NCBI RefSeq assembly: GCF_006345805.1 | Contig: NC_043000.1 | Span: 140,864,001 to 140,928,000, forward strand | Length of the DNA stretch: 64,000 nt | DNA from: Octopus sinensis | Lineage: Eukaryota | Direction: 5' to 3' | Part shown: piece after piece, positions 6,219 to 64,000 of the stretch | Numbering within the stretch: position 1 is the stretch's first letter | How the letters are laid out: each line of letters starts with the position of its first letter | Translations under genes and position numbers: made by a program | Notes under the pieces: model-generated | Seen by the model: the letters and a program-made list of their open reading frames with translations, nothing else | Database searches by the model: none | What the model was told of the DNA's origin: nothing

Positions 6219-6367
6219 TAAAAAAAAATTTTTGAAAGAGATATAATTACTTTTTTTTTTTCAAATGCCTTCCACTTAAAATAACTAATAATGAAGATGA
6301 GACACAGTAAGCAGTAGCGATAAAAATACAGGTATGTACTGTGACCTTCTTTGTAGATATTGATGCG

Positions 6368-27238: not shown

Positions 27239-27634
27239 CAATTACATTAAGAGATGAGACTAATTTGAAGATTAAGAATATTTGAGATAGCTATCTCATT
27301 GTTTGGTGAAAACAAGATAATAAAAGAACACATTTTATTGTATTAAGTGATAGTTTTAAAATATTGCTCAACACATTCCCTATAGATTTATAATTACTTG
27401 TTGATTCCCCTGTTCTAAAAAGATTGTGCTTTTATACAAATGTTAGGTGTTATGTGAATTGGCTTGAAATGTTTCCAGTCAGTATATTATGCATATTGGA
27501 CATATTCTTTGGCCAGTATTTTATCTTCATTTCCAGTATAAAACTTCTTATAAAGCGTATAAAATATAAATATATACAAGAGTAGCCATCATAGAGCAAG
27601 AAGAGAGAACTGAAAGGCGGCGAGCTGGCAGAAA

Positions 27635-28032
27635 CGTTAGCACGCCGGGCGAAATGCTTAGCAGTATTTCATCTGCTGCTACATTCTGAGTTCAAATTCC
27701 ACCGAGGTTGACTTTGCCTTTCATCCTTTCAGGATCGATAAATTAAGTACCAGTTATGCACTGGGGTCGATATAATTGACATAATCCGTTTATCTGTCCT
27801 TGTTTGTCCTTTCTGTGTTTAGCCCCTTGTGGGTAGTAAAGAAATAGGCATTTCGTCTTCCATTACGTTCTGAGTTCAAATTCCGCTGAGGTCGACTTTG
27901 CCTTTCATCCTTTCGGGATCGATAAATTAAGTACCAGTTACGCACTGGGGTCGATGTAATTGACTTAATTCATTTGTCTGTCTTTGTTTGTCCCCTCTGT
28001 GTTTAGCCCCTTGTGGGCAATAAAGAAATAAG
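27635..28032 (+). mobile_element. SINE family B with tandem duplication of its body
   Basis: Full copy 27635-27850 followed directly by a second headless body 27850-28030. Confidence 0.88.
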
Positions 28033-28479
28033 AAGAGAGAACTGAAACATGCAGTTATAGCTTTAATCCTTGCTCCAGAGTTTGATACTTTGATGGACTT
28101 TTTGAGAAGTCACTATAACATGTGAAGGTGTTACTTGTTAACCGCTATAAATAAGAATTTGCTTACACTAATAAAATCTTCTAAGAAATTAATACTCCTA
28201 CATGTTGGACATCCAAAGATTAGCTTATTATTATGGTTTCTTTACTGAGCTGAAGTTTGGTTTTCCATACAGTGCAGTTCCAAATTGAATTAACACATTG
28301 ATGGAATTTCTGATGTTAGTTTTGAAGCTCAAGAACAGAAAAATTCTATGATCATTGGAACCTAAGTAAAATACATATAAAACTTCTGTTCCTTAGGTGA
28401 TGTAGTTGAAACTTATAGGGACAGTGAAAAATTTAGAGACCATCTGTTTTCTTTAATCCTTTACATCTCCACAACTCAG

Positions 28480-28807
28480 CAGTTTGGCAAAAGAGACTGA
28501 TAGAATAAGTACCAGATTTAAAACAAAATAAGTACTGGAATTGGTTTGTTTAACTAAAACCTTTCAAGGCAATGCCCCAGCATGGCCACAGTCAAATGAC
28601 TGAAACAACTAAAAAGAAAACAAACAAACAAACAAACAAACAGGTGCAGGAGTGGCTGTGTGGTAAGTAGCTTGCTAACCAACCACATGGTTCCGGGTTC
28701 AGTCCCACTGCATGGCATCTTGGGCAAGTGTCTTCTACTATAGCCCTGGGCCGACCAATGCCTTGTGAGTGGATTTGGTAGACGGAAACTGAAAGAAGCC
28801 TGTCGTA

Positions 28808-28854
<47 letters not shown>

Positions 28855-29055
28855 TCTGTTTGTCCCCCTAGCGTTGCTTGACAACCGATGCTGGTGTGTT
28901 TACGTCCCCGTCACTTAGCGGTTCGGCAAAAGAGACTGATAGAATAAGTACTGGGCTTACAAAGAATAAGTCCTGGGGTCGATTTGCTCGACTAAAGGTG
29001 GTGCTCCAGCATGGCCGCAGTCAAATGACTGAAACAAGTAAAAGAGTAAAGAGTA
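28480..29055 (+). mobile_element. SINE family A 3' fragment, (AAAC)n, then a full-length family A copy (28642-29055)
   Basis: Recognisable head aggtgcaggagtggctgtgtgg and tail gaaacaagtaaaagagtaaagagtaa. Confidence 0.9.
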
Positions 29056-30486: not shown

Positions 30487-30889
30487 TACTCTTTACTCTT
30501 TTACTTGTTTCAGTCATTTGACTGTGGCCATGCTGGAGCACCGCCTTTAATCGAGCAACTCGACCCCGGGACTTATTCTTTTGTAAGCCCAGTACTTATT
30601 TTATCGGTCTCTTTTGCCGAACCGCTAAGTAACGGGGACATAAACACACCAGCATCGGTTGTCAAGCAATGCTAGGGGGACAAACACAGACACACAAACA
30701 CACACACGCATATATATACATATATACGACGGGCTTCTTTCAGTTTCCGTCTACCAAATCCACTCACAAGGCTTTGGTCGACCCGAGGCTATAGCAGAAG
30801 ACACTTGCCCAAGGTGCCACGCAGTGGGACTGAACCCGGAACCATGTGGTTGGTAAACAAGCTACTTACCACACAACCACTCCTGCGCC
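30487..30889 (-). mobile_element. SINE family A, full length
   Basis: ttactctttactcttttacttgtttcagtc...cacaaccactcctgcgcct. Confidence 0.9.
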
Positions 30890-31505
30890 TTTTCTTGTGG
30901 AAGTTAGTCTTGGGATGTCCTGATGGTTGAGTATATAAACTACAATTCCATGGATAAAAAAAATTTGAAGAGATTGTCTTCTGCTATTTTTGTGGTGAAA
31001 TATGCCCGGAGAAAATATTAGCATTTCAAATTTTTCAGTCCATAAAGTATCTACATGTTACTGAATATGTAAACTTAGAACTTTATTATTGCTAGTTTTA
31101 TAGTGTGGGTATAAATAACTTTCAAAAATATGCAAGTCACATATAAACTACTTTAAAGTATTAATTTAGAAGTCATCATCGATGTGGTTTAAAAGAAGAT
31201 ACAATTTGTACTGAGAATGAGAATGATAAAATGACATTGTGCGACTGATTAGAAAAAAAATGTGTAGAGCAACAAAAATAAAATTTAGATATTTGTAAAG
31301 AAAATTGTGAAATAAAATGAAAATATGTTTTTACAGAAGCAAGAACCTCAATGCTATTACTCAAGTTACTATAAACAGCAGTTAAATCCCTCTGAAATTA
31401 CATCCTAATGTCTCATAAAAGGTAAAAAGAGGAATAACATACTACAGGGTGGGTGGAAAGTAACTAAGTATTAGAAATTGCTTATAGAATTTCTAGTATC
31501 ACTAG

Positions 31506-32099: not shown

Positions 32100-32735
32100 A
32101 TCTAGAGACAATAAAAAAGCTTTAATGCAAAACTGATGACCATGAGCTCTGTGAACGATGCAAGAAGAAGTGACCATCCAACAACATCCCAATCAGTGGA
32201 GAACGTGGCAACAGTGCTGGAGATGTTTAATTGCAGCCTGAAAAAATCAACATGTCAAGCAGCTGGACAAAGTGGACTAACAAGACACACCATTTGTATA
32301 GTATTACATAAAGAATTGAATTTCCATCCATGGAAACCCCATTACATGCAGGAGCTAAAACTTGAAGAGTGTGACTGCAGAAGTCCAGAACTCCAAGAAA
32401 TCCAGATCTCACTCCATGTGATTTTTACCTGTGGCATTACACAAAAGAGGTGTACAAGACAAAACCTTGCACACTGGAAGACTTGGAGACACAGATTCAG
32501 GAGGTTTTCAATGATATCTCAGACGTTGTCCTTCAGAAGGTTGTTCATTCCATCCTTGGCCATTTGAAGAAACTGGTTGACCCCACCGGTGCTTATGTTG
32601 AAATATGAAGATTTACTTTCATTTTCTCATGTAATAAAGAACATGTATCATTTGTCTCAATAAATTAGTAAAAATAATATGGAATTTATTGCCAATTTTT
32701 AAAGCCCATTTACTTTTCAATCACCTTGTATATAA
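32100..32735 (+). pseudogene. Tc1/mariner-superfamily (rosa/maT-like) transposase remnant, internally deleted
   Basis: ORF 32136: SVNDARRSDHPTTSQSVENVATV...KKSTCQAA...LHKELNFHPWKPHYMQEL; 3' end caatcaccttgtata resembles a TIR. Confidence 0.7.
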
Positions 32736-34931: not shown

Positions 34932-36765
34932 CTAATGAACACTGTGTCACCTTTACCCCAACCAGTGAGAATATTTGCCTCAATGCAGTTCCTTATGAAT
35001 TTGTGCACAATTAATCTTGTACCATTGCATGATTTTGGTTGAGGCAAATTATGCAATAGCATGATAGGAGTCCCTTTTTTTTCAGCTGAAGACACAATGA
35101 GGAGCTGTACCTGGTAGTTTTAGTGAGTTCGAAAATCCGCTGAGGTAGTTAAAACTATCCTGATCATCAACAACACTGTCAATTGAGTTATAAGTGAATA
35201 TTTATCCTGGAAGCTTATTCAATAGCATATTATTAATGCTATTTACAGCAAAATGTTTCGGGAGCCAGGATAGCTCACTCACGGATCTAATCTGTATTGT
35301 AATTATGAAGAAGATTAGGAAAGATGTCATTCACCAAATCATCAGTGGAGAGTGTAAGAAACTGATTTTCATCAATTGGAAGTCTCCCTTCACCTAGTTT
35401 CAACAGCTGCTCAGCAAATAGTTCTGCTGATTGAAGTCTTGAAAGCCTTGATCCCATATTTGTTGAAAGTTGAAGTGTTTTCACATGATGCCATAATACA
35501 GAAGCATTGAGCTCATCCACTTTTGTTCCTCTTGAAACAACTAGCAGTGTTTGTTGGAAGTCTCCTGACTATTATACAATGACATTTCCCATCATGGAAT
35601 AGCAATTTCTAATGTCTCATACTGTTCTGTCAACAATTTCAAAACCATTTTTGTGAGCCATGGTACACACGTTCCAGACAATTAAGTGACATCTTTCTAT
35701 TAGTTCACCCATGGCAGAATTTTTAGATGTATTACAAACTGAATCTTGTTTGTTAGATAAATCACGCTCAGAGTTGCTGAAGCATGGAATAAACTGCCTG
35801 CGTCAGTTGTTGACTGCCATGACACTGCATCCTTTAAGGCCCTCATGCTTTCCGAAATCCGCCGAAACTACACCTGATTATATATACACTTTAGATGAGT
35901 TGTAGTGCACCTGAGCACTGTACACAATTATTATTATTATTTATTATTATTAAAGGTAACTTGAATGTTGAATGGGGAGTCTGACCTCTGGGTACTAATG
36001 TTGCTGCAATACCAGAAGTAGCATTAGCTAAAGCTATTTTATTTTCTTGACGAACTTTAACCAGAAGGAGTTTAATTACAAATGATTTCCCAGTACCTCC
36101 TGGAGCCTCTAAGAAATAAAGTCCTCCTGTGTTATTGTTAATACTTTCTATGACAGTGGAATATGCATGACGTTGATCAGATAGAAGCTTGGGAAGATTA
36201 TCAGTTATGTACATGGTCAGTTCATCCTTATCAAAGGAAATTTTTCTCATTATTTCAGTGGACAGATTGTTAAGATCCCCTCAATAAGTTAATGGGAAAC
36301 CTAAATTTTATATAGGTTCATCTCGCTTGGAAATAATTTGATCTTCTATTTCAATCAAAGCCTCATTATATATAGCATCAGTGAAACCAATATCTTGCTC
36401 AGGATTATTGAACTAAAGTTGGTGCTTGGAATCTTCAGCAAGATCATTTCTGAACATATTCCACAGTTGAGCAGGATTACTTACTTCACAATTTTTGAAA
36501 ATAATAGCAAAAAGACATCTTAAAGTCTTAGATGTTTTTGATATTGAAGCTTCTTCTAATGTTGCTTCCCATTTCTGGTTATTTGCAAGCAAACCTAACT
36601 TGAAACACACTTCTTGATATGTTCTGTAAATCTCACCATCAACTCGTTTCAAACTTTCCCATGAAGTTGATCCCCTTTTTACATGAAGAAGCATTCTGAG
36701 ATGAAAGCATTCATTTTGATTAGGGTGTACAGAATGTAATCTACCAATTGTTGTTCCAAAATTAA
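34932..36765 (-). pseudogene. Helitron RepHel remnant (PIF1-like helicase domain)
   Basis: Colinear broken frames: TIGRLHSVHPNQNECFHLRMLLHVKRG; LYFLEAPGGTGKS (Walker A); ATSGIAATL; LIVWNVCTMAHK (decayed motif II); GTPIMLLHNL...CNGTRL. Confidence 0.9.
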
Positions 36766-36779
36766 TACTAGAATAACCC

Positions 36780-37350
36780 GTGGCCTATGCCAGGGGTGTA
36801 ACCAGCCCACTTATTCGTACCTTTCCTTCATTGGACACTAAGCTCTGATTGCAAAGACCTGTTGAGGCAAGTGAAATCGAAATCAAATTTGATGACTGGT
36901 ATCCATGCTAGTGGAGCAGTTAGAGAACCATCTGAGTATGATCGTTGCCAGAGCAGCTGACAGGCTTCCATGCCAGTGGCAAATAAAAAGCACCATTCAA
37001 GCATGATTGTTACCAGCGTCACCTTACTGGCACTTGTGCCGGTAGCATGTGAAAAAACATTCAAGCAAGGTCGTTGCCAGTGCCACTGGACTGGCTCCTG
37101 TGCAAGTGGCATGTAAAAAACACCATTTAAGTGTGGCTGTTGCCAGTACCGCCTGACTGGCCCTCGTGTTGGTGGCATGTAAAAGCACCCACTATACTCT
37201 CGGGGTGGTTGGCATTAGGAAGGGCATTCAGCTGTTGAAACTCTGCCAGATCAGATTGGAGCCTGGTGCAGACATCTGGTTCGCCAGTCCTCAGTCAAAG
37301 CATCCAATCCATGCTAGCATGGAAAGCGGACGTTAAATGATGATGATGAT
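36780..37350 (+). mobile_element. Repeat family E, long form
   Basis: Internal gccagt../gtggcatgtaaaa units and tail gttaaatgatgatgatgatg. Confidence 0.85.
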
Positions 37351-37626
37351 GGCCTTGAAACTTTGTACCTATTTTGAGTCTGTTCCATTTATTATTACTC
37401 CTTGTGTATAGAAGAATATGATTTGACTGTGTGATGGCATTAGACAAAAAGAGAGATAGACAGACAGAAAGATAGAGAGGCAGCAACAGTGAGACAGAAA
37501 GAGACAGTGACAGAAGGAAACAGTGACAGAGAGAGAGAGAGAGAGAGAGAAGGAAAGAGAGAAAGGAGGAGAGAGAAAGAAAAAGAGAGGGAAAATAGAC
37601 AGATAGAGAAGAAAGAAAACCATAAA

Positions 37627-37955
37627 GATGGTGTCTGGTTTTAGTTTCACTTTGTGGGACAAAGAAAGGCAAAGAGAGGCAGAATCTCTTTGAGGTAGCA
37701 TGGCAGAGACAGACAGGCAGAGAATATAGATGGGGAGAAAGAATAGAGGAGACATAGAAAGAAAATCATGGAGATGGTGTCTGGTTTTAGTTTCACTTTG
37801 TGGGACAAAGAAAGGCAAAGAGAGGCAGAATCTCTTTGAGGTAGCATGGCAGAGACAGACAGGCAGAGAATATAGATGGGGAGAAAGAATAGAGGAGACA
37901 TAGAAAGAAAATCATGGAGATGGTGTCTGGTTTTAGTTTCATTTTGTGGGACAAA
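37627..37955 (+). repeat. 146-bp tandem repeat (2 essentially identical units plus a partial third)
   Basis: gatggtgtctggttttagtttcac starts at 37627, 37773 and 37919. Confidence 0.92.
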
Positions 37956-37957
37956 CA

Positions 37958-38495: not shown

Positions 38496-39781
38496 CACAT
38501 AGTCAGGTTTATATGAATATTCTTCTAAACATGTGTAATTAAACAGTTCTACATCTTTAATTTATTTGCAATTAAATGTTTTCTATTTTCTAATGGCTCG
38601 CTAATGTGTTTTTCTGGTTTCCACTGCTTCAAAATATTAATTTTCCTGCATTGAAGGTGATATGAATGGTTCTAAGTGCACCATACCTTACTTTCTTCAT
38701 GATGTTCAAGAATCACAATGATATTTGAAATTAATGTACGGACCATACAAAATTGCTTCAGTGTATTGCATATCACATTTCTGAATGGCTGGGCATTTCA
38801 AATTCTTATCTATTAATTCCAGAATTTACCTCTATTGCTGAAACGAACTCTCTTGGAATTAACTTTTGCTTTATATTTTCAAAATTTAGATTGATTTCAC
38901 ATGGAGGATAATATAAACACAACCACATACATGTACATGCAAGTATGAATTTTATGCTTTACGTATACTTTCTATATTTGTAGCAATGGTGAGATAGGCT
39001 TCTGAATATACTCGTATCATTTTTTTTTCTCTGTGATCATATATTGTTAGTTAGAACAGAATATTTGGAAAAAGCATGTGTTTTTATGAAAATAACAATG
39101 AAACATAGTAGGAATGTGTGAGGAAGAGAGGGACAATAACTAATACACAAGAGGAAACTGAAGAGGATGAATAAGATGAAGAGAGAGAAAGAGGTGAGGA
39201 AATGAAACAGGAGACATTCAATGATGGCTAATCATATGCTATACAAAGAGGTGTGGAATTGCAGAGCAATGACACACACACACACATACATACATACATA
39301 CATACACACACAAATATTGACAGAAATACACACTGTAGTTTATGCTGTTAGTATCCCATGTTGAATATTTATTTTGTAAATATTCAGATATTTTCAAGAG
39401 ATAAACAAGCAAATGAATTTATTATAAGAATTGCATCTAAAATTCTATTTAAATTAAAATGAACAGTATTTTACAAACAAGGAAACAGAAACAAAAAAAT
39501 TCTTTGAAATTCTATACAAATTCTTGCCATCTTTCTCAATGTACTTTACCACAGCTATCCATGAAAGTCCCCAAACCAACCTTTTCTGCCAAGCTATATA
39601 TTATATATTGCTTTAAATGTGTAGACACAGACATGGATATATTAGAACTTTGCTTTGTGCCCAGGTTCACCCATACTATATTGCATGCATCTTGAGCAAG
39701 TGTCACCTACAAGAGACTTTGGTTAAGCAAAACCTTATATGAAGAATTGGATGATGGAATTTGTGAGAAAGTTTATTAAAT

Positions 39782-40188
39782 AGGCGCAGGAGTGGCTGTG
39801 TGGTAAGTAGCTTGCTAACCAACCACATGGTTCCGGGTTCAGTCCCACTGTGTGGCACCTTGGGCAAGTGTCTTCTGCTATAGCCCCGGGCCGACCAATG
39901 TCTTGTGAGTGGATTTGGTAGATGGAAACTGAAAGAAGCCTGTCGTATATATATATGTATATATATATATGTATGTGTGTTTGTTTGTGTGTCTGTGTTT
40001 GTCCCCCTAGCATTGCTTGACAACCGATACTGGTGTGTTTATATCCCCATTACTTAGTGGTTCAGCATAAGAGAACGATAGAATAAATACTGGGCTTACA
40101 AAAAGAATAAGTCCCGGGGTTGAGTTGCTTGATTAAAGGCGGTGCTCCAGCATGGCCGCAGTCAAATGACTGAAACGAGTAAAAGAGT
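39782..40188 (+). mobile_element. SINE family A, full length
   Basis: aggcgcaggagtggctgtgtggtaag...gaaacgagtaaaagagt. Confidence 0.9.
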
Positions 40189-40599
40189 ATATACAAGAAT
40201 GAGTCATATATTAGCTGCATTAGCAAGCTAAAGGCATATCAGGGGTTGAAATTTATCAAAGAGAGATTGTAAAGGAAAGGTATTATGATACCAGGGAGCA
40301 AGCCGGGAAGTGACAAAACATTCATAGTTTAACTTGTGAAATGATCCACAACAGACTTGGATTTTGTAAAGTTTATACAACTGGAATCTCAATACAACTC
40401 ACAGAATTGGACAAATTAAAATGAAGTGAAATCTGCTAACATTTGGCTTGCTGTGATAAGGAAGAGAAACCAGCTCGGAAAAACTTTTCAGTGGTGAAGA
40501 AGCATGAATATACCACTGCAAGGGGGAGAAGAACTACAAGAATATGGAATGGAAATACCTGCAATTATCATTTAGGTAAAAGTTTAAATCTTAAACATC

Positions 40600-49054: not shown

Positions 49055-49457
49055 CTCTTTACTCTTTTACTCTTTTTCTTGTTTCAGTCATTTGACTGCA
49101 GCCATGCTGGAGCACTGCCTTTAGTCGAGCAACTCGACCCCAGGACTTATTCTTTTTGTAAGTCCAGTACTTATTCTATCGGTCTCTTTTTGCCGAACCG
49201 CTAAGTGATGGGGACGTAAACACACCAGCATTGGTTGTCAAGCAATGCTAGGGGAACAAACACAGACACACAAACATACATATATATATATATATATACA
49301 TATATACGACAGGCTTCTTTCAGTTTCCGTCTACCAAATCCACTCACAAGGCATTGGTTGGCCCGGGGCTATAGCAGAAGACACTTGCCCAAGATGCCAC
49401 ACAGTGGGACTGAACCCGAAACCATGTGGCTGATTAGCAAGCTACTTACCACACAGC
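49055..49457 (-). mobile_element. SINE family A
   Basis: tactcttttactcttttac...gtttcagtcatttgactgc...cttaccacacagc. Confidence 0.88.
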
Positions 49458-52059: not shown

Positions 52060-52594
52060 AAAATATCCAGGCTAGTCAAGTCTGGTGAACCTGAAGGCAA
52101 TTCAAAGTAGACCTCACACATGGTTCCAGCAAGATGGGGAAACTGCTCATACCACAAGAGAAACAATGCAGTTGTTATGGCAGTGCTTTGGAGAGAGAAT
52201 AATCTTCAAGTACGGCAATGCCAACTGGCTTTCACATTTCCCAGACTTAAATAGCCCAGATATTTTCTTGTGGGGATACCATCAACAAACCAAAGACCAT
52301 GAGGAAACTGAAGGAGAACATCAATAGAGAAATCAAAGAAGTAAAGTCTGAAAGTCTTGAGGGTGTTATGGTGCAAGTTTTGGAAAAAGCAAGGACATGC
52401 AAAGCCAAAAATGGCTGCAACTTACATGATGTCATTTTTCATATTTGATGTAGTGGTGTTGCAAGATTTGATTTATGTATATTAATTTCCGCTATGTCCT
52501 TATTATTTTATCAAAATTTCATGAATTTATTTGTGAACTTAAGGAAGTTATTAAAAACTAAAACCCATCAGGGGCTTTTGGGACACCCTGAATA
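52060..52594 (+). pseudogene. Tc1/mariner-superfamily (rosa-like) transposase C-terminal remnant with 3' TIR
   Basis: WFQQDGETAHTTRETM...W.SHFPDLNSPDIFLWGY; end ttttgggacaccctgaata. Confidence 0.82.
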
Positions 52595-52795: not shown

Positions 52796-53699
52796 GCATG
52801 CACATATTTTCTGAGTGGGGACTAGTGAAAATGCAAAATGCATTGTGCACTGCTCAATCTTGCCAATGGTGAGTACTCACAGCCAGTCACAGACCTACAT
52901 AAGATTTATCACCATTGATATATAGGAAAACAGTGAATAAACATTCAGTGGTATGGCAAATAGTCATCTGGCTGAATAAAAATGTTATATGCTGGAGAAA
53001 CTGTGTTTGATTAAAATTGCCATCCATGTATCCTACTTAATGTAAATACATCAGTGAAAGGCAAATTAACAGTGATATTTGTCCAGAAACAACATATCTT
53101 ATTGAAATTCTGCTCTCTCTAATTAAGCTTACTTCTAAGCAATATAGAAAGACCTGAATGTTAAGTGATTTTTGAGTTGTTTTTTTTTTGTGGTGTTTAG
53201 AATTTGTATAAAAATTAATATATATTTCTAAATAGAATAATAATAATTTCCAGATGCGTTTTTTTTTTAATATTCTGTAAAACGATTCTTTGATACAATC
53301 ATTTTAATTAGCGCTTTTTTGGTATCTTGTGCCAATGTATTGAATAAATATACTAATTGATAGCTTTCAGTTTTACAAATACTCTCCATTCAACCATACA
53401 TCATTTAGATGTGTGTGGCTCCTCCTGGAAGTTTGGGGAATATATATATATTTTGTTATTTGGTTCTTTCTCTCGTGATTTGAACATTCCAATGCTAGTA
53501 TAGAAAAAGTCAAACTGGTCAATATAAATCAATGTTTATTTAACTTCTTTGTTGATTTCCATAACAAATTACGTATTTGGAATAGAATGTGATTAAGGAT
53601 CCAGCTGACAGTTTGATGTAAATATATGTTTTGTATTAGTTGGAAATAATACATTTTAAATAGGCCTTGTAATATTGTTTGCATGTATTTTTGTCAGTG

Positions 53700-53972
53700 C
53701 TACCTCAATGACATTCATGCCAGTGGCATGTAAAAAACACTATCCAAGCATGCCAGTGCCACCTGACAGCTTCCCATGCCAGTGGCATGTAAAAAGCATT
53801 ACACTCTTGGAGTGGTTGGCATTAGGAAGGTCATTCAGCAGTAGAAACCTTGCCAAATCAGATTGGAGCCTGGTGCAGCCTTCTGATTTGCCAGTTCTCC
53901 ATCAAACCATCCAACCCATGACATCATGGAAAGCAGACGTTAAACAGCGATGACGACAATGATGATGATGAT
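53700..53972 (+). mobile_element. Repeat family E
   Basis: gccagtggcatgtaaaa units; tail gttaaacagcgatgacgacaatgatgatgatga. Confidence 0.8.
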
Positions 53973-54334
53973 TATCTGTATATATCAGATCCTGCTTTCT
54001 TCAGAAAGGCAATGCATATTGTAGTCATGGATACAATATATGTGACAAAATATGGTTATGTCACAAATGAAATGCTATTTGTCATTAGTTGATTAGATTC
54101 AATTGAGACATACCTATGGCTAATTAGCAACAGCTCAAGAAAGATAGTAACATTAAGGTCTTTAATAAGGAGGCAAACTATTTCTACATTCTGAGTTCAA
54201 ATTCTGTCATGGTTTGACTTTGTCTTTCATCCTTTCATAGTTGATTAGGGTAATATTTAAAAAGCTTGTTAACTTGAAATGTTCTTTTGTTCAAACTATA
54301 TGCATTTCAAAATTATTTAACTGTCAACACCTTT

Positions 54335-54693
54335 TTTATTTATTTATTTATTTATCTAGTTTCAGCTCACAAGCTGTGGCCATGCTGGGGCACTGCCATT
54401 TGGTGTTGCTACATGATTTTACTTCATGAATGCCTTTTAGAAATTGCCATTTGGTGCATGAGAGAGTTCGATGCAGCTGTCCTCATCTGCACCTCCTGCC
54501 GTGAAGTTGGTTCATCTGGGAATCCTGACAAGAAGAGATCCAGTTTCATTTTAAAGACATCTGCATCCACCCCATGCAGGTCTCTTAGGTTCTTCGGGAG
54601 GATATTGAAGAGCTATAGGCCTCAGAAGCCCAGGCTATCACAGTATCTTGTCCTACATCTTGATGGCAAATTTGGAGTCCTTGGCACTATGCA
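54335..54693 (-). mobile_element. 5'-truncated CR1-type LINE insertion, left arm only
   Basis: Minus frame RTRYCDSLGF..LFNILPKNLRDLHGVDADVFKMKLDLFLSGFPDEPT, (TAAA)n tail; right arm reads gtcaataccttttgataatt with no insert. Confidence 0.8.
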
Positions 54694-55429
54694 CTTTTGA
54701 TAATTTTTGGTAAATATTTTTTGTTTATTACTTATCTACTTTGGCTGAATATTCCTTTTGCACATATGCACACATGCATGCATGCACGTGCACACACACA
54801 CACATTGTTTCTCTTTCTCCCTACTAAGACTATTCCCATCTAACTTTAGTGCTTTCTAAATTTGCTAATTATAAAACAATTTTCATTCTGTTATTATCCA
54901 ATGGTAAATTTTCTGTTTATTTACGTAGGTAGTGTTGGTCTACTATTAGTATCTTACTATTTTCTAACAATTCCTCTCTCTCTCTATCTCTTTCTCACTC
55001 TCCCCCTTCCTCTCCCTCTCTCTACACACATATCCATGCACACACACACACACAAAACAGGTTCCATCTATCAAATTCCATTCAACAGTTATTAATCAAA
55101 CTGAGTTTATACTAGAAGACACTTCTCCCATATAACTTGCAGTTGTTTTGAAGATTGGACAGCAATTCCACTAAGCTATCACAAAACACCTTGGAGTATT
55201 TAGCAAGAACCAAACTCTAAAACAAGAGTATTATGTACCAGCAAGTCAGTGTCAATCAACAAGAAATACCAACCAAATCCGCTTCACAAGTCATTTGCTA
55301 CCATTTAAAAAAATTACCGTTGAGTAAAAACATATGTAAAAGAGCATAGCCTCACTCAAAAACTAGGGAGCTCCATCCAATTAAGCCACTCCCTTTTTTT
55401 GAGTAGAACAGACCAGAATTACTTGAGGG

Positions 55430-55667
55430 CTGGTGGCGAGCTGGCAGAATCGTTAGCACACCAGGCAAAATGCTTAGCGGTATTTCATCTGCCGTTACGT
55501 TCTGAGTTCAAGTTATGCCGGGGTCGACTTTGCCTTTCATCCTTTCAGGGTCGATAAATTAAGTACCAGTTATGCACCGGGGTCAATGTAATCGACTTAA
55601 TCCCTTTGTCTGGTCCTTGTTTGTCCCCTCTAAGTTTAGCCCCTTGTGGGCAATAAAGAAATAAGAA
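55430..55667 (+). mobile_element. SINE family B present in both arms (partner 62050-62468 minus, which has an extra tandem body)
   Basis: Shared diagnostic variants such as tatgccggggtcgac and gtctggtccttg in both arms. Confidence 0.88.
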
Positions 55668-56986
55668 TTACTTGACAGCATCAACAACTTAAAGAAATTT
55701 TGAATGATAAAATCGCTCAGAATTATACCAGTTAACTGTCACTCCAATTCTGGATTTTACCAAACATGTCCATGGTCAACATAACAAGCATCACAATGTT
55801 AGTAACACAGATCACAAAATTTTAGAGTCTTGCCTTGTTTGATATCTTGATAGAAAGTTAAACATTTCTATTTTGGTAGAAATTTCTAGTTTGTATTTGC
55901 AATCAGTTTGCAAAATATGAAACAAGATTTTTGATTGGCTGACAGATAACCAGGAATTTTAGGTGTGATGGATATATAAGAATAGCCATCAATAGGAACC
56001 TTTATGAAAGACCATGAAATATTCAAATAGTTCGCTTTGCTGCAGGTAGTTGTCTCTATTGGGAACAAATGATTTATTCTTTCAAGTGAAAGTCTACATA
56101 AGAAATGTGACACAATATGGTGATGTGATATACATACTAAATGGGTGAAATAGCTTTGAAAAAAGCTTTCAACATCTGTAGAATACATGATGCTAACAAG
56201 CATAAAATTTAGAACACAACTCATCTGAGTGAGACAGTGACATTAATAGCATTTGCAGAAATGTGCATGAGGTGAAAAAATTGATATGATCATAGATGCT
56301 GAGAATGGTAAGTGCATCAAATGTGTCATGTGGTTCGACAGAGAGTACTTAGAGAAAAGTATCAGTGGGTGAAACACAAGGATAACTGCTGCCTGTTGGA
56401 TATATGGGTGTTGGGCTCGTAGACAGGATGACAAAATACTGCAATATTTGTCAATGTACTCTAAGTCAGACATATCCAGTCCATACTTGTCAATTGATTA
56501 TGAGGATGGGCATACATCATGTTCACAAGATAAACTGATAGTGCCTCAGATGGCACCTTTTCTTCCCTCCCCAGTGATGAACAGAGTCTGTTTCCTTCTG
56601 AGATGAGACATGGGAAACCTCGGTAAAGAATTATTACACAAATAGCCACACATACTTCACACACTCATGAACATTTGTATACATGTTTGTGCATGCATAT
56701 AAATGTGGAAATGTTATAAACTTCTTAATATGTGTATTTGGGTAATTGAATTTATCCACATGAGCACGCACACAAACACACATGCATTCACACACACGTA
56801 CCCACACCCACATACACAGTCATATATATATAACTTTAAAAAATTATTTATATATACACATGCTGATATATGACCTACGTTGGAGTCCTTATTTGCATAA
56901 TCACCGAACCTGGAGCTTAACTCTGGTTTGTCCATAGCACTTACTCAGCATAACCTGACACCTTTGGGTCTTATTGACATCATTAC

Positions 56987-57019
<33 letters not shown>

Positions 57020-60000
57020 AATTAGAGATAAAACCACTATTAGTCAAATCAAACAATGAAAAACATAAAAATAAACATAATATAATATACAAAATATATA
57101 AAATTTAAAATATAAATTATATTTAAAATTTTTAATTTATATTAATAATTTTATATTTTTTAAATATTTTAAAAATTAATAAATTAATAAATTAATATAT
57201 TTTTATATTTTCAAAATTATTTTTTTAATAAATATATATAACTATCAAAAAGTTTAATATAAGATAATAAGTAAAACCACTATGTACATTTCATGGCCAT
57301 AACCTAATTGGACCTACAATAATTTAAATTCAATTAGAAATTCGAATTATAGTTAAAGTCAATCTTCAGGTTAATGATAATAGTTAAATAAATAAGCAAA
57401 TATATTTAAACAATATTTTTTAAGAAATAAATAAAATTATATATATATTTTTTTAAAAACTCTATTATCAAACTAGAAACTTTAACGAATAGGATTATGT
57501 CATACAATCCAATTATAATATTAAATATTAATTTTCAAGGTAAAAATAGATAGAAAATGTATTTATCTATTCAGATATAATATGGCTTTAAAAAACATAA
57601 TAAACTCACAAATAACCTAATCTCAATTATAGTCAATATGTAATTACCTAATTTTTTAACAAAAAAATTATCAAAAAAATAATCACTATTCATATTATTA
57701 AATTTAGATTCAAATCTAATAATTATAAAATATTTGAATAATAACTAAATTATTATCAGTAAATATATATACGTATTATAAAAAACTAAATAAATTAACT
57801 ATTCCATTATTACTTACGAAATCTTTATATATATAAAACTGAGAATGTGTATCTGTCTGTCTGTTTCCCTAAGACTTGAGAACTACACAACCAATTCCAT
57901 TCAAATTTAACACATGCCTTACTTGGGGTCCATGTAGTTTCATGGGCAAAAAATGTTCAACTTTTTGCCTAGAGCCAGCCCATAGCAATATCATATCTTC
58001 TCCACTATTTCAGTATAACGTGTTAAAAGTGAAACAAAAAGGTTTCTCTATTTTATGTAAGATACTTTCACTTTAACAATAAAAATAATAATAACAATTG
58101 AATTATATGTAGTAAGTAATAATTAAAATCAAACTAAAGTATAATATAATCGTAACATAACAAAAGTAAAATTAGCAATTGGTATAAAATTGCATCAATG
58201 ACTTGAACTTGAATAAAAAAAATTAGCAGTGCAGAAATGGAATAGTTCAGATGGATAATAAAAAATTAAATTAAAGAAAAGACTATTGTCTATAAAGTAT
58301 ACAATGTAGAGAAAAAAGATTTGAACACCTGGAGGAAAGCACCTTCGAAAAGTGTCTTGGTGCGACTATGAAAGGTATCTAATCAGAGGCGGTAAATTCG
58401 CCACAATAGAAGCAAGGCTCGAGTCAACGGAGCGTGCAAGGGAGTACTCGACTCGAACTTGCAAAGTGGAAATATTTTATCTTTACCATTATATCTGGGA
58501 CGTAGGACGTCCCGGAAAAAAATTTTTAATGCCCCCCCCCCCCGAAGTAGAGGTAGGCTGGATTGTAGACACACTTCTATACAAGAGGAGGACAAGATAC
58601 AATTGATCGAAATTACAAGAGACGGGCTAACAATTCCAGGCTGTTATATATTTTGAGTATTGTTATCACTAGCGATATCAAGATAAAACTTTGTATTTTG
58701 TATTTTATGTGTAGATGTATATATATAGACGTACATGTAATATGTACACATATATATACACATATATACATGCACTAGCACTATGACTCGGCAACAAGGG
58801 GTCTTTAATGCTAGAATATTAAAAGATGAAAAAGCAAATTGTAAACGTATTACCTATCTTAAAAGAACCCTATAACTATTTAACGATCAATATATCTCGT
58901 TGGCTAATTAATAACTTACAAAAACCGTATAGTTATGATCTAATAATTAAATAATGAAATACATATCTTCAACAAGTAAATACTTATACAATCAAATTAT
59001 CAATCCGTAGTTATATTGTATCCAATAAATACCATATAACATAAACTATTAAAATATTAAAAAAGGTTTACTTATTTTTCAAAAATCGTGTCTTTAACTA
59101 AACTAATAATAAAACGAATGGAAAATACTTTAACTTTGAAAACTACGAATATGTTTTATCAATGAAAAATACTACTACAAATTATCAATTGAAAATAGCT
59201 ATATTTAAGCTATAAAACTTTAACAACTAAATCATTACGTGACAATCAGCATTTATATAGTATACAAAATAATAATACAATAAGACTTATAAAAGTATTT
59301 TTAAAATACAATAAGACTTATTAAAATATATTAAAAATCTTAATTAGAAATGTGAATAACGATTATTTAGTTATATTATTTGGTAATTAAATTTTTGGAC
59401 TATAACTGAGTAAAGGATATTTGTAAGATTATCATGTTTTTTAAGCCATATTATATATTCATAAATATCTCTACTAGTTGACTTTGGTCTTTTATAGCTT
59501 AAATATAGCTATTTTCAATTGATAATTTGTAGTAGTATTTTTCGTTGATAAAATATATTCGTAGTTTTCATAGTTAAATAATTTTCCATTTGTTTATTAT
59601 TAGTTTAGTTAATGAAACGATTTTTGAAAAATAAATAAACCTTTTTAATATTTTTATAGTTTATGTTTTATGGTATTTATTGAATACAATATAACTACGG
59701 ATTGATAATTTGATTGTATAAGTAATTACTTGTTGAAGATATGTACTTTATTATTTCATTATCAGATCATAGCTATACGGTTTTTGTAAGTTATTAATTA
59801 GGCAACGAGGTATATTGACCATTAAATAGTTATAGGGCTTTTTTAAGATAGGTTCTACGTTTACAATTTGCTTTTTCATCATTAATTTTTTAATATATTT
59901 CGTAAGTAATAATGGAATAATTAATTTATTTAGTTTTTTATAAAACATATATATTTATTGATAGAGATAATTTTAGAACTTAATATTATATTTATATATA

Positions 60001-60722
60001 TTTATTGATAATAATTTAGTAATTATTCAAATATTTTATAATTATTAGATTTGAACTTAAATTTAATAATATGAATAGTGATTATTTTTTGTTAAATAAT
60101 TAGGTAATTAGATATTGACTATAATTGAGATTAGGTTATTCGTGAGTTTATTATGTTTTTAAAGCCATATTTTATCTGAATAGATAAATACAATTTCTAT
60201 CTATTTTTACCTTAAAAATTAATATCTAACATTATATTTGGATTGTGTGACATAATCCTAATCGTTAAAGTTTGATAATAGAGTTTTTTATAAGAAAAAT
60301 TATTATTTTATTTATTTCTTAAAAAATATTGTTTAAATATATTTGCTTATTTATTTAACTATTATCATTAACCTGAAGATTGACTATAACTATAATTCGA
60401 ATTTTTAATTGAATTTAAATTATTGTAATTCGAATTAGGTTATGGCCATGAAACGTACGTAGTGGTTTTACTTATTATCTTATATTAAACATTTTGATAC
60501 ATTTTGATAGTTATATTTATTAAAAAAAATAATTTTAAAAATTTAAAATTATAAACATATATTAATTTATTAATTTAAAAAATATTTTAAAAATATAAAA
60601 ATTTATTAATATAAATTAAAAATTTTAAATTGAAATAATTTGAATTTTATATATTATATTAATTATGATTATCTTCATGCTTTTCATTATTTGATTAGAT
60701 TAATAGTGGTTTTATCTCTAAT
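57020..60722. mobile_element. Very AT-rich PLE-like element forming the palindrome core, bounded by (TA)n, with decayed outward-facing hammerheads (57277-57373 minus; 60369-60465 plus)
   Basis: Terminus aattagagataaaaccactattagtcaaatcaaacaa matches the 19485 element terminus. Right arm reads TAAC CTGAAGA TTGACTATAAC...GTTATGGCCAT GAAA CGTACG T A GTGG. Confidence 0.65.
57822..58814 (+). mobile_element. Non-autonomous Helitron-like insertion, left arm only
   Basis: 5' TCTTTATATATATAAAACTGAGAATGTGTATCTGTCTG, 3' ...TAATGCTAG; removing it restores tacttacgaaa|aatattaaaa, colinear with the right arm at 59885-59910. Confidence 0.8.
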
Positions 60723-62049
60723 TTATATATATATATAGACAGAGAGAGAGAGAGAGAGTAATGATGTCAATAAGACCCAAAGGTGTCAGGTTATGCTGAG
60801 TAAATGCTATGGACAGACCAGAGTTAAGCTCCAGGTTCGGTGATTATGCAAATAAGGACTCCAACATAAGTCATATATGAGCATGTGTATATATAAATAC
60901 TTTTTTAAAGTTATATATATATATGACTGTGTATGTGGGTGTGGGTACGTGTGTGTGAATGCATGTGTGTTTGTGTGTGTGCTCATGTGGATAAATTCAA
61001 TTACCCAAATACTCATATTAACAAGTTTATAACATTTTCACATTTATATGCATGCACAAACATGTATACAAATGTTCATGAGTGTGTGAAGTATGTGTTT
61101 CCCATGTCTCATCTCAGAAGGAAACAGACTCTGTTCATCAGTGGGGAGGGAAGAAAAGGTGTATCTGAGGCCCTATCAGTTTATCATGTGAACATGATGT
61201 ATGCCGATCTTCATAATCAGTTGACATGTATGGACTGGATATGTCTGACTTAGAGCACATTGACAAATATTGCTGTATTTTGTCATCCTGTCTACGAGCC
61301 CAACACTCATATATCCGACAGGCAGCAGTTCTGCTTGTGTTTCACTCACTGATACTTTTCTCTAAGTACTCTCTGTCGAACCACATGACACATTTGATGC
61401 ACTTACCATTCTCAGCATCTATGATCATATCAATTTTTTCACCTCATGCACATTTCTGCAAATGCTATTAATGTCACTGTCTCACTCAGATGAGTTGTGT
61501 TCTAAATTTTATGCTTGTTAGCATCATGTATTCTACAGATGTTGAAAGCTTTTTTCAAAACTATTTCACCCATTCAGTATGTATATCACATCACCATATT
61601 GTGTCACATTTCTTGTGTAGAATTTCACTTGAAAAGAAATTAACCATTTGTTCCCAATAGAGACAACCACCTGCAGCAAAGCGAACTATTTAAATATTTC
61701 ATGGTCTTTCATAAAGGTTCCTATTGTTGGCTATTCTTATATATCCATCACACCTAAAATTCCTGGATATCTTTCAGCCAATCAAAAATCTTGTTTCATA
61801 TTTTGCAAACTGACTGCAAATAGAAACTAAAAATTTCTACCAAAATAGAAATTTTTAACTTTCTATTAAGATATCAAACAAGGCAAGACTCTAAAATTTT
61901 GTGATCTGTGTTACTAAGATTGTGATGCTTGCTATGTTGACATTGGACATGTTTGGTAAATTCCACAATTGGAGTGTCAGTTAACTGGTAAAATTCTGAG
62001 CAATTTTATCACTCAAAATTTCTTTTAGTTGTTGATGATCTCAAGTAAT

Positions 62050-62468
62050 TCTTATTTCTTTATTGCCCACAAGGGGCTAAAGATAGAGGGGACAAACAAG
62101 GACCAGACAAAGGGATTAAGTCGATTACATCGACCCTAGTGTATAACTGGTACTTAATTTATCATTCTGAAAGGATGAAAGGCAAAGTCGACCCCGGCAT
62201 AATTTGAACTCAGAACGTAACGGCAGATGAAATTACCTATTTCTTTACTATCCACAAGGGGCTAAACACAGAGAGGACAATCAATGACAGACAAACTGAT
62301 TAAGTTGATTATATTGATCCCAGTGCGTAACTGATACTTATTTAATCGACCCCGAAAGGATGAAAGGCAAAGTTGACCTTGGCGGAATTTGAACTCAGAA
62401 CATAGCGGCAGACGAAATACTGCTAAGCCTTTCGCCCAGCATGCTAATGATTCTGCCAGCTCGCCACC
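62050..62468 (-). mobile_element. SINE family B with tandemly duplicated body, right arm
   Basis: Two successive ...cacaaggggctaaa...gaactcagaac bodies. Confidence 0.88.
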
Positions 62469-63152
62469 AACTCTCAAGTAATTCTGGTCGGCTCTGCTCA
62501 AAAACGGAATGGCTTAATTGGATGGAGCTCCCTAGGTTTTGAGTGAGGCTATGCTCTTTTACATAAATATGTTTTTATTCAACGGTAATTTTTTTTAAAT
62601 GGTAGCAAATGACTTGTGAAGCGGATTTGGTTGGTATTCTTGTAGGTCGGCACTGACCTGATGGTACATAATACTCTTGTTTTAGAGTTTGGTTCTTGTT
62701 AAATACTCCAAGGTGTTTTGTGATAGCTTAGTGGAATTGTTGCCCAATCTACTAAACTACTGCGAGGTACGTGGGAGAAATGTCTTCTACTATATACTCA
62801 GTTTGATTAATAACTACTGAATTGAATTTGATAGATGGAACCTGTTTTGTGTGTGTGTGCGTGGATATGTGTGTGGAGAGAGAGAGAGAAGGAAAGGGGA
62901 GATTGAGAAAGAAATAGAGAAAGGAATTGTGAGAAAATAGTAAGATGCTGAAAGTAGACAAAGATTACCTACATTAGTAAACAGAAAATTTACCATTGAA
63001 TAATAATAGAATGAAAATTGTTTTATAATTAGCAAATTTAGAAAGCACTACACTTAGATGGGAATAGTGTCAGTAGGGAGAAAGTGTGTGTGTGTGTGTG
63101 CACGCATATGTGTTCATGTGCATGTGTGTGAAAGGAATATTCGGCCAAAGTA

Positions 63153-63691
63153 TTGGGTTGTCTGGAAAGTTCATGCCAATTTATAGTAGCTTACCTTTCG
63201 ACTTATTTTAGAACATGGTTGAGTCCATAAAATAGGATTTGACTACACCTCCATTTAGAGCCCAGTATAAGCTATCTTTTCATGGAAGAAGGTTTATGTT
63301 CCTATAACCTGTGTTAATTCTGTAACCCTTTAAAATGGAAGATGCTTTGGGAACCAGACAAAAAATGATGCAACTCGACCGGGATGTGTTACCCCACCCT
63401 CCATATTCACCAGATATTGCTCTTCGGATTTTCACTTAGTCAGGTCTCTGTAGAATAGTCTTAATGGTAAAAATTTCAATTCCTTGGATGATGTAAAAAG
63501 ATACCATGATGAATTCTTTGCCATGAAACCACCTCAATTCTGGGAAGAGGGTATTTTCAAGTTAAAGGAAAGATGGAGACGCATTGTGCAACAAAATGGT
63601 TCATATTTGGTTGATTAAAACTGAAATGGCAAGTATTTATTGACTTTTTCTTTCCTTTAAAAATCAGCAGGAACTTTCCGGACAACCCAAT
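63153..63691 (+). mobile_element. Internally deleted mariner element with TIRs and TA target-site duplication, right arm only
   Basis: TA(63151-52) ttgggttgtctggaaagttc ... gaactttccggacaacccaa TA(63692-93); encodes LPHPPYSPDIA...FWEEGIFKLKERWRRIVQQNGSY; left arm has the empty site ccaaagTAgataag. Confidence 0.92.
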
Positions 63692-64000
63692 AGATAAGTA
63701 ATAAACAAAAAATATTTACCAAAAATTATCAAAAGGTATTGACAGTTAAATAATTTTTAAATGCATATGGTTTGAGCAAAAAAACATTTCAAGTTAACAA
63801 GCTTATAAATATTACCCTATTAAGCAGCAGTCAATAACGTTTCTGAAATTCATAATATATATATATCAGGTCTTAACAATGTTACTTTCACAAAAGGTTT
63901 TAATATTGATTTCAAATTTTGACACAAGGCGTTCAAGGTTAGGTGGAGTGGGGTAGTTGATTATATCAACCCCAGTACTCAACTGGTATTTTATCAACTA

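What the first reader, a model, noticed from the sequence alone, without database searches (positions are those of the whole stretch)
54245..63820. ~9.6 kb palindrome that has persisted long enough to collect arm-specific transposons
After removing arm-specific inserts both arms are ~3.6 kb and colinear, around a ~270-bp spacer. The arms contain ordinary flanking DNA (a shared SINE B, (CA)n/(GA)n tracts, ~1 kb of unclassified sequence), so this is an inverted segmental duplication, not a TIR pair. Arm divergence and independent inserts rule out a simple assembly mirror artefact. Long palindromes with short spacers are normally unstable, so its survival, possibly helped by the ~1 kb Helitron inserted near the centre, is notable.
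Basis: seen in the sequence. Interest (0 to 1): 0.75.

Follow-up and report, generated by a model that had tools for sequence, protein, structure and literature searches.

The report
Old decayed 9.6-kb inverted duplication
Two mirror-image copies of about 3.6 kb of ordinary, non-coding, transposon-littered octopus-type DNA sit 272 bases apart; the structure is real in this sequence but old (about 7% diverged), and it is a common kind of genome scar rather than a puzzle of stability.

Summary
Arms 54246-59217 and 59490-63819 are inverted and colinear around a 272-bp spacer. After removing three arm-specific inserts they are 3616 and 3790 nt, and 92.9% identical over 3535 aligned columns (K2P 0.075).

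The differences look evolutionary: 251 substitutions against 27 indel events, CpG decay, and clean empty sites for every insert. A mirror-read artefact is therefore excluded. A mis-join of two paralogous copies cannot be excluded from one window.

Both arms carry the same SINE insertion with the same 12-bp target duplication, so ordinary genomic DNA was duplicated. This is not a TIR pair.

- The extra 184 bp in the right arm is a deletion in the left arm, inside a dimeric SINE.
- The "Helitron" label (993 bp) is unproven.
- The right-arm insert is a mariner-derived MITE, and the outer left insert is a LINE 3' fragment.
- Mirrored old SINE fragments in both flanks suggest the palindrome runs past the window end.
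- A 1.2-kb block is half as diverged as the rest, which is compatible with arm-to-arm gene conversion.

Survival is not remarkable. A 272-bp spacer and 7% divergence lie outside the fragile range described in yeast. No coding, RNA-family or transposon-end signal was found. Interest is low.

The parts
54246..59217 (+). Left arm, 4972 bp including two arm-specific inserts. It is 3616 nt after their removal.
   Evidence: colinear inverted match to 59490-63819.
59218..59489 (.). Asymmetric 272-bp spacer. It holds a 31-bp unit x2.2 (59270-59338). It also holds an older (about 79%) third copy (59362-59467) of a ~105-bp unit present in each arm (57564-57668 and 60085-60190).
59490..63819 (-). Right arm, 4330 bp including one arm-specific insert. 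It is 3790 nt after its removal.
54336..54698 (-). Left-arm-only 363-bp insert, a 5'-truncated retroposon (LINE-type 3' end). In reverse orientation it carries a (TAAA)n tail. It is flanked by a ~5-bp duplication CTTTT, and the empty site is intact in the right arm.
   Evidence: TTTA x5.2; junctions. The C-terminal LINE-like peptide was recognised by eye only; Pfam found nothing.
63153..63690 (-). Right-arm-only 538-bp mariner-derived MITE. It has 20-nt terminal inverted repeats TTGGGTTGTCCGGAAAGTTC (1 mismatch) and a TA target duplication. Internally it keeps a remnant of the last 49 residues of a Mos1-type transposase.
   Evidence: one search gives Mos1 transposase E = 8e-8.
57823..58815 (+). 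GC is about 30% against about 18% around it. It has no target duplication, and the empty site in the right arm is exact.
   Evidence: no 3' hairpin; no Pfam; no other copy in the window.
55427..55663 (+). SINE in the left arm, 237 bp. It is a collapsed form of a dimeric SINE, flanked by AGAATTACTTGA at 55415-55426 and 55664-55675.
62053..62473 (-). Intact 421-bp dimeric SINE in the right arm: a full unit plus a unit lacking about its first 57 nt. It is flanked by the same AGAATTACTTGA (62474-62485 and 62041-62052).
   Evidence: 185-bp period x2; colinear 421-bp match at 87% to another dimer at 27616-28034.
55801..56983 (+). Low-divergence block of the arms, 3.7% against 8.8% elsewhere. Its right-arm counterpart is about 60761-61915. 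It contains a 213-bp identical run (56155-56367).
56991..60750 (.). AT-rich core straddling the centre, GC 13-20% outside the 993-bp insert. It is the lowest-GC stretch of the whole window.
54184..54245 (+). Old, degenerate SINE fragment abutting the left arm. It ends ...CATAGTTGAT at the arm boundary.
   Evidence: (34% from consensus).
63905..64000 (-). Old, degenerate SINE 3' half in mirrored orientation, cut by the window end. It begins TAGTTGAT and is followed by 85 bp of unique DNA (63820-63904) before the right arm.
   Evidence: (37% from consensus).

Best explanation
This is a genuine, old, non-functional inverted segmental duplication (a quasi-palindrome) of ordinary non-coding, transposon-rich DNA in an octopus-type genome.

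A stretch of at least 3.6 kb already carried a dimeric SINE, CA/CT microsatellites and an unusually AT-rich tract. It was copied in inverted orientation next to itself, leaving 272 bp of unduplicated sequence at the centre. The most likely route is a replication template switch or fold-back priming event within the AT-rich tract. That step is inferred, not shown.

Since then the two copies have decayed neutrally to about 93% identity. Each has acquired its own changes:
- Left arm: a LINE 3' fragment, a 993-bp unclassified segment, a 184-bp collapse of the SINE dimer, and probably a 173-bp deletion at its outer end.
- Right arm: a mariner MITE.
- Several 5-45-bp indels across both arms.

A 1.2-kb interior block is only about 4% diverged, most simply because of a later arm-to-arm gene conversion. 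The structure persists because a 272-bp spacer, and later the mismatches and asymmetric inserts, keep it out of the hairpin or cruciform-prone range.
For: Colinear inverted chain with E = 0.

Cleaned arms are 3616 and 3790 nt, 92.9% identical, with 251 substitutions against 27 indel events, ts/tv 1.22 and K2P 0.075. CpG observed/expected is 0.45, and 34 of 54 CpG positions differ between arms. The substitution spectrum is strand-symmetric.

The same SINE insertion with the same 12-bp target duplication is in both arms, so the SINE predates the duplication. The dimer architecture recurs at 27616-28034. The left SINE matches the second unit of the right dimer at 6% divergence, but the first unit at 16.6%. 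The left arm therefore lost 184 bp.

Every arm-specific insert has an intact empty site in the other arm, and two have target duplications.

Arm ORFs show no homologue in 5.8 billion proteins, no Pfam family and no Rfam family above threshold. They are frameshifted or changed non-synonymously between arms, with 7 nt differences giving 6 amino-acid changes.

Divergence is heterogeneous: chi-square p = 4e-6, and the 213-bp identical run exceeds all 2000 shuffles.

On the published Octopus vulgaris TE clock (JC 0.065 is about 18 My; PMC13282606), 0.0375-0.055 substitutions per arm corresponds to roughly 10-15 My. The window shares its SINE (about 90%), a 410-bp repeat family and a Helitron with an O. 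vulgaris chromosome.

Literature on spacer and divergence effects: PMC10164571 and PMC7999016.
Against: - Adjacency of the two arms rests on one assembly. No reads or second assembly could be consulted.
- Copy number of the arm sequence in the whole genome is unknown; only 64 kb could be searched.
- The formation mechanism is not recoverable from the junctions. The inner ends are clean with no informative microhomology, and the outer ends are probably not the original ones.
- The low-divergence block could instead reflect a locally lower mutation rate or constraint on a non-coding element.
- The 993-bp difference could be a deletion in the right arm rather than an insertion in the left.
Confidence: 0.8

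Rival explanations
1. Assembly mis-join. Two real but diverged paralogous copies, or highly diverged haplotypes, were joined head-to-head by the assembler, so no palindrome exists in the chromosome.
For: Nothing in the window proves adjacency. The right arm lies 181 bp from the window end, and the position of the window in its contig is unknown. Inverted joins are a known long-read assembly error (own knowledge).
Against: There are no Ns or abrupt quality-like features. The spacer is unique sequence that itself carries an older copy of an arm unit, so it belongs to the same AT-rich tract on both sides. A divergence of 7% with three arm-specific transposon-size differences is far above allelic variation, so at minimum two paralogous copies exist. 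A read-through (missed adapter) artefact is excluded by the substitution-dominated, CpG-biased differences.
Confidence: 0.1
2. A foldback-type or long-TIR DNA transposon. The two arms are terminal inverted repeats of a mobile element with a tiny loop.
For: The arms begin with the same sequence TAGGGTAAT, and a 3-bp ATT can be read on both outer sides.
Against: - A 3-bp match in AT-rich DNA is at chance level.
- The arms contain a SINE dimer with its own target duplication, microsatellites and about 1.3 kb that encodes nothing.
- There is no transposase remnant and no other copy in the window or in the 20-kb O. vulgaris locus.
- The flanks carry mirrored old SINE fragments sharing the variant TAGTTGAT, which argues that homology continues beyond the supposed termini.
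Confidence: 0.03
3. A functional hairpin locus. The inverted repeat is transcribed into long double-stranded RNA, as a small-RNA source or ADAR substrate, and the 1.2-kb low-divergence block is kept paired by selection.
For: The block 55801-56983 is 3.7% diverged against 8.8% elsewhere, with a 213-bp identical run. Cephalopod transcriptomes are rich in edited dsRNA (PMC5625713, listed; abstract only read).
Against: There is no Rfam match near any gathering score. Promoter or transcript evidence is not available. The paired blocks are separated by about 3.8 kb that includes an asymmetric 993-bp insert. Gene conversion explains the same pattern without function. The differences show no A-to-G strand bias.
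Confidence: 0.05

Closest known systems
Large diverged inverted repeats / inverted segmental duplications of animal genomes (quasi-palindromes as defined in PMC7999016)
   Same: Two kb-scale arms in inverted orientation with a short unique spacer. They are made of ordinary DNA including older transposons, and are then eroded by substitutions, indels and new insertions.
   Different: Nothing essential. The only particulars are the very AT-rich centre and the evidence that the arms run beyond the sampled window.
Palindromic AT-rich repeats (PATRR11, PATRR22 and others) of the human genome
   Same: The centre of symmetry lies in the most AT-rich DNA of the region. The central 1077 nt can fold as one long hairpin when single-stranded (-350 kcal/mol).
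   Different: PATRRs are a few hundred bp, more than 90% AT, nearly perfect and practically spacer-less, and that is why they break. Here AT is 80-87%, the arms are 92-94% identical near the centre, and there is a 272-bp spacer plus a 993-bp asymmetry. Fragility is therefore not expected.
Ampliconic palindromes of primate X and Y chromosomes (own knowledge)
   Same: They are inverted duplications with a unique spacer. There are signs that part of the arms has been homogenised by arm-to-arm gene conversion.
   Different: Those arms are 9 kb to 1.45 Mb and more than 99.9% identical along their whole length, and they carry testis-expressed genes. Here the arms are 93% identical, have no genes, and only a 1.2-kb block is less diverged.
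Foldback transposons (FB, Galileo-like)
   Same: Long inverted arms around a short middle.
   Different: There are no target-site duplication, no repeated family, no internal tandem-repeat arm structure and no transposase. The arms contain an unrelated SINE with its own target duplication.

Membership tests
Inverted segmental duplication (quasi-palindrome) | Two arms in inverted orientation, colinear over their length, with a spacer | tested here: met
   six colinear blocks, 3535 aligned columns, 92.9% identity, 272-bp spacer.
Inverted segmental duplication (quasi-palindrome) | Arms consist of pre-existing host DNA: older insertions are shared at the same site with the same target duplication | tested here: met
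   The SINE dimer is flanked by AGAATTACTTGA in both arms. CA/CT tracts are shared.
Inverted segmental duplication (quasi-palindrome) | Only two copies in the genome, adjacent on one molecule | not testable with these tools
   No other copy in the window or in the one O. vulgaris locus fetched.
Foldback / long-TIR DNA transposon | Target-site duplication flanking the whole element | tested here: not met
   the flanks are ...GTTGAT | TAGGG...CCCTA | TTAAGC.... At best a 3-bp ATT in one phase, which is chance level.
Foldback / long-TIR DNA transposon | Multiple dispersed copies or a transposase relative | tested here: inconclusive
   None in 64 kb. No protein homologue for arm ORFs and no Pfam family. 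The whole genome was not searchable.
Helitron (for the 993-bp left-arm segment) | 5'-TC and 3'-CTRR termini, no target-site duplication | tested here: met
   in one phase the segment reads TCTTTATA...AATGCTAG, with no duplication.
Helitron (for the 993-bp left-arm segment) | Insertion between host A and T | tested here: not met
   A precedes the TC, but CTAG is followed by A. The phase that restores the right-arm empty site exactly is CTTTA...GCTAGA, between T and A.
Helitron (for the 993-bp left-arm segment) | Subterminal GC-rich hairpin about 10-20 nt before the 3' end | tested here: not met
   the last 80 nt fold at -7.9 kcal/mol, z = -1.2, and the only stem uses the terminal CTAG itself.
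Helitron (for the 993-bp left-arm segment) | Other family copies or similarity to an autonomous Rep/Hel element | tested here: not met
   No match to the Helitron remnant at 35.3-37.9 kb or anywhere else in the window. No Pfam hit.
Tc1/mariner MITE (for the 538-bp right-arm insert) | Terminal inverted repeats, TA target duplication, relation to a mariner transposase | tested here: met
   20-nt TIR, 1 mismatch, unique in the window; TA on both sides, empty site in the left arm; Mos1 C-terminus, E = 8e-8.
PATRR-type fragile palindrome | Near-perfect, essentially spacer-less, more than 90% AT, a few hundred bp | tested here: not met
   Central arms are 93.5% identical, the spacer is 272 bp, and GC is 13-20%.
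Sex-chromosome-type ampliconic palindrome | Arm identity above 99% maintained along the arms; genes in the arms | tested here: not met
   92.9% identity overall. No coding signal.

The most novel reading that the evidence does not exclude
The inverted repeat is a transcribed long-hairpin locus, a dsRNA source for small RNAs or ADAR hyper-editing in a cephalopod. On this reading its 1.2-kb low-divergence block (55801-56983 / about 60761-61915) is held together by selection or by recurrent arm-to-arm conversion, and the palindrome is considerably larger than the window shows.
Probability: 0.05. Interest if true: 0.5.

Novelty: new member of a known kind. Interest (0 to 1): 0.18.

Why it matters
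Little beyond local genome history.

It is a clean, datable example of an inverted duplication in a cephalopod-type genome. The order of events can be read directly: an old SINE, then the SINE dimer, then the duplication, then LINE, mariner and unknown insertions, a dimer collapse and a possible conversion tract. That could serve as a small calibration point for transposon activity and for indel and CpG-decay rates.

It is also a reminder for annotation pipelines. Long inverted repeats with 100-300-bp spacers are not in themselves evidence of unusual stability or of a transposon.

Tried and rejected
1. Coding content of the arms. The 112-aa ORF and a 626-aa concatenate of eight arm and flank ORFs gave no hit in 5.8 billion proteins. 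Pfam gave nothing. The ORFs are not conserved between arms. The coding or exon idea is rejected, and with it the only route to fetch orthologous loci by protein look-up.

2. RNA genes. Rfam at E <= 1 gave only microsatellite-type miRNA false positives far below gathering scores. ARAGORN found no tRNA-like gene, not even in the SINE heads.

3. Global MAFFT of the raw arms forced the unrelated inserts onto each other. I discarded it and redid the alignment after excising inserts at BLAST-defined junctions.

4. Right-arm 'tandem duplication' of 185 bp (TRF). I reinterpreted this as the intact state of a dimeric SINE, because the same dimer occurs at 27616-28034.

5. RNA-mediated or edited origin of one arm. 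The substitution matrix is symmetric, with A>G 36 against G>A 33. Rejected.

6. Identifying the SINE in the literature by sequence strings gave no paper.

7. The O. vulgaris locus fetched through the PIF1 hit is a paralogous Helitron copy, not the orthologue of this window. It only shows that the transposon families are shared.

8. A second mariner-like ORF (52076-52324) had no PDB match, and short LINE/RT-like ORFs had no Pfam match. These labels remain by-eye only.
Full report
OBSERVATION. The inverted-repeat scan and gapped self-BLAST of the region against its reverse complement confirm a colinear inverted match. It runs between 54246-59217 (left arm) and 59490-63819 (right arm), around a 272-bp spacer (59218-59489).

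The chain is broken by three arm-specific blocks:
- Left 54336-54698 (363 bp).
- Left 57823-58815 (993 bp).
- Right 63153-63690 (538 bp).

Each of these has a clean empty site in the other arm. After excising them the arms are 3616 and 3790 nt. They align over 3535 columns at 92.9% identity. Apart from the SINEs and low-complexity tracts, nothing in the arms recurs in the other 54 kb of the window. No other large inverted repeat exists in the window.

ARE THE DIFFERENCES BIOLOGICAL? Yes.
- The arms differ by 251 substitutions but only 27 indel events. Transitions slightly exceed transversions (1.22) and K2P is 0.075.
- CpG is depleted (observed/expected 0.45), and 34 of the 54 CpG-containing positions differ between arms.
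- The substitution matrix is strand-symmetric.

This is the signature of neutral decay of methylated animal DNA, not of read errors. A read-through or mirror artefact is therefore excluded. What cannot be excluded from one window is that an assembler joined two truly diverged paralogous copies head-to-head.

WHAT THE ARMS ARE MADE OF. Both arms contain the same SINE insertion, bounded by the same 12-bp target duplication AGAATTACTTGA. The SINE family has at least 12 copies in the window.

In the right arm the element is a 421-bp dimer: a full unit followed by a unit lacking about its first 57 nt (TRF period 185). An independent copy of exactly this dimer lies at 27616-28034 (87% over 421 bp). 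The left-arm element is 237 bp. Its body matches the second unit of the right dimer (6% divergence), not the first (16.6%). Its head differs from the head of the first unit mostly at decayed CpGs. The 184-bp difference is therefore a collapse of the dimer in the left arm, not a duplication in the right arm.

The rest of the arms breaks down as follows:
- CA/CT microsatellite tracts.
- About 1.3 kb of unique sequence with no protein homologue, no Pfam family and no Rfam family. Its ORFs are frameshifted or changed non-synonymously between arms.
- An inner 1.2 kb of extremely AT-rich DNA, GC 13-20%, the lowest in the whole window.

Because a SINE with its own target duplication is shared, the arms are duplicated host DNA, not terminal repeats of a mobile element.

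THE ARM-SPECIFIC BLOCKS.
1. Right 63153-63690 is a mariner-derived MITE. It has 20-nt terminal inverted repeats found nowhere else in the window and a TA target duplication. It also keeps an internal remnant of the last 49 residues of a Mos1-type transposase (E = 8e-8).
2. Left 54336-54698 is a 5'-truncated retroposon in reverse orientation. It has a (TAAA)n tail and a CTTTT duplication. A LINE-like C-terminal peptide is recognisable by eye only.
3. In one phase it reads TC...CTAG and it has no target duplication. However, the 3' neighbour is A rather than T, and there is no subterminal hairpin (z = -1.2). It has no Pfam hit and no similarity to the Helitron remnant at 35.3-37.9 kb or to anything else in the window. 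Its higher GC than the surroundings favours insertion over a right-arm deletion, but this is not proven. It lies 402 bp from the spacer, so a 402-bp inner inverted repeat with the 272-bp loop remains intact.

THE OUTER ENDS ARE PROBABLY NOT THE TRUE ENDS. The left arm is abutted by a degenerate SINE fragment (54184-54245, + strand, SINE positions about 60-128) ending ...CATAGTTGAT. The right flank, read on the minus strand from the window edge, begins TAGTTGAT and continues through the 3' half of a SINE (64000-63905). Then come 85 unique bp and the arm.

Both fragments are 34-37% diverged from the family consensus, against 6-12% for the other copies. They are in mirrored orientation. In their 8-nt overlap they share TAGTTGAT, where the consensus reads GGGTCGAT and none of the nine other aligned copies reads TAGTTGAT.

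I estimated the weight of this overlap. For two independent copies at that divergence, 8/8 identity has probability about 0.002. For copies identical by descent at about 10% divergence it is about 0.43. The simplest reading is that the duplicated segment extended further out and that the left arm later lost 173 bp. The palindrome would then run past the end of the window. This rests on 8 nt and was noticed after the fact, so it is a lead, not a result.

HETEROGENEOUS DIVERGENCE. K2P by segment:
- Outer 0.8 kb: 0.11.
- Unique middle (55665-56990): 0.044.
- AT-rich part: 0.084.
- Inner 402 bp: 0.068.

Non-overlapping 200-column bins are heterogeneous (chi-square 54.7, 16 df, p = 4e-6). The best two-breakpoint block is 55801-56983 (3.7% against 8.8%). 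The longest identical run (213 bp, 56155-56367) exceeds all 2000 shuffles, whose maximum was 159. Excluding CpG sites does not remove the contrast.

Protein-coding constraint is excluded. Arm-to-arm gene conversion is the simplest explanation. A locally lower mutation rate or a constrained non-coding element cannot be excluded with two sequences only.

THE SPACER. The spacer is not symmetric. It contains a 31-bp unit x2.2. It also contains a third, older copy (about 79%) of a ~105-bp unit that is present once in each arm at about 95% identity. The AT-rich tract therefore already contained internal repeats before the large duplication. The inner arm ends are sharp...AGCTATAAAA on both sides, and give no microhomology information.

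MECHANISM (inferred). The centre of symmetry lies in the most AT-rich DNA of the region. This fits a break or stalled fork there. Either of two routes would follow: fold-back priming from a short pre-existing inverted repeat (PMC7999016), or a template switch to the complementary strand and back. For a small interstitial inverted duplication the template switch is the more natural route (own knowledge). The junctions do not allow a choice.

AGE. With the O. vulgaris transposon clock used in PMC13282606 (JC 0.065 is about 18 My and 0.09 about 25 My), 0.0375-0.055 substitutions per arm gives about 10-15 My. This estimate depends on that calibration, on the species, and on how much conversion has occurred.

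IS ITS SURVIVAL REMARKABLE? No. In yeast, widening the spacer of an Alu inverted repeat from 12 to 20 bp lowers recombination about 40-fold, and from 12 to 100 bp 300-fold. Divergence lowers it exponentially, and even one mismatch near the centre matters (PMC10164571). In eukaryotic cells replication stalling was seen with a 12-bp spacer but not a 52-bp spacer (PMC7999016).

A 272-bp spacer was present from the start, and mismatches and asymmetric indels accumulated afterwards. The central 1077 nt can still fold into one long hairpin if single-stranded (-350 kcal/mol). That requires long single-stranded exposure. The 993-bp block roughly doubles the distance between the outer 3.2-kb arm parts, from about 1.1 to 2.1 kb, but it is not needed to explain persistence.

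COMPARISON AND VERDICT. The structure is a member of the well-known class of diverged inverted segmental duplications.
- It fails the defining features of PATRR-type fragile palindromes, which are near-perfect, spacer-less and more than 90% AT.
- It fails those of sex-chromosome ampliconic palindromes, which are more than 99% identical and carry genes.
- It fails those of foldback transposons, which have a target duplication and form a repeated family.

No function is indicated. The finding is real and neatly dissectable but ordinary. The points worth keeping are the corrected annotation of its parts, the possible conversion tract, and the likelihood that it extends beyond the window.

Noticed in passing
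window 27616-28034 (and 62053-62473): The abundant ~235-bp SINE also exists as a fixed ~420-bp dimer: a full unit plus a unit lacking about its first 57 nt, with junction AAAGAAATAGG(C/T)(A)ATTTC. Two independent loci in the window carry it at 87% identity, so it looks like a transposing composite family rather than a local tandem duplication.
   Followed up: partly
window 5813-6221, 28638-29055, 30487-30893, 39778-40189, 49058-49457; L001 6443-6884 and 15042-15418: A ~410-bp dispersed repeat family has five copies in the window at about 90% identity in both orientations. It is also present in the fetched Octopus vulgaris locus. It was not classified.
   Followed up: no
window 35290-37957 (minus strand): A decayed Helitron-type helicase region with PIF1 domain fragments (Pfam E = 2e-22 and 4e-8). 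It is colinear at 82-85% nt identity with a copy annotated 'ATP-dependent DNA helicase' on O. vulgaris chromosome OX597821.1 (L001 9207-10686).
   Followed up: partly
window 20017-21888 and 36910-37375: A GC-rich (44-48%) repeat family occurs in direct and inverted copies at 76-80% identity and carries unusually long ORFs (113-130 aa). A related ORF is at 53660-53950, just left of the palindrome. Its nature is unknown.
   Followed up: no
window 1-400 and 58699-58775: A (TATATACA/TGTATATA)-like microsatellite array opens the window. A short tract of the same kind sits inside the 993-bp left-arm insert. It produces spurious mir-297/mir-466 Rfam hits far below threshold.
   Followed up: yes
window 57564-57668, 59362-59467, 60085-60190: A ~105-bp AT-rich unit is present once per arm (about 95% identical between arms). 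A third, older copy (about 79%) lies in the spacer, direct with respect to the right-arm copy. No further copy occurs in the window.
   Followed up: partly
window 32115-32605 (+) and 52076-52324 (+): ORFs that look by eye like fragments of mariner/Tc1-type transposases (N-terminal HTH region and DDE region). Neither Pfam nor PDB sequence search confirmed them.
   Followed up: partly
window 56617-56647 and 59955-59999: Two mid-size arm-specific indels: 31 bp present only in the left arm and 45 bp present only in the right arm. The latter lies in a 43-bp-period AT-rich tandem tract, so it is likely replication slippage.
   Followed up: no
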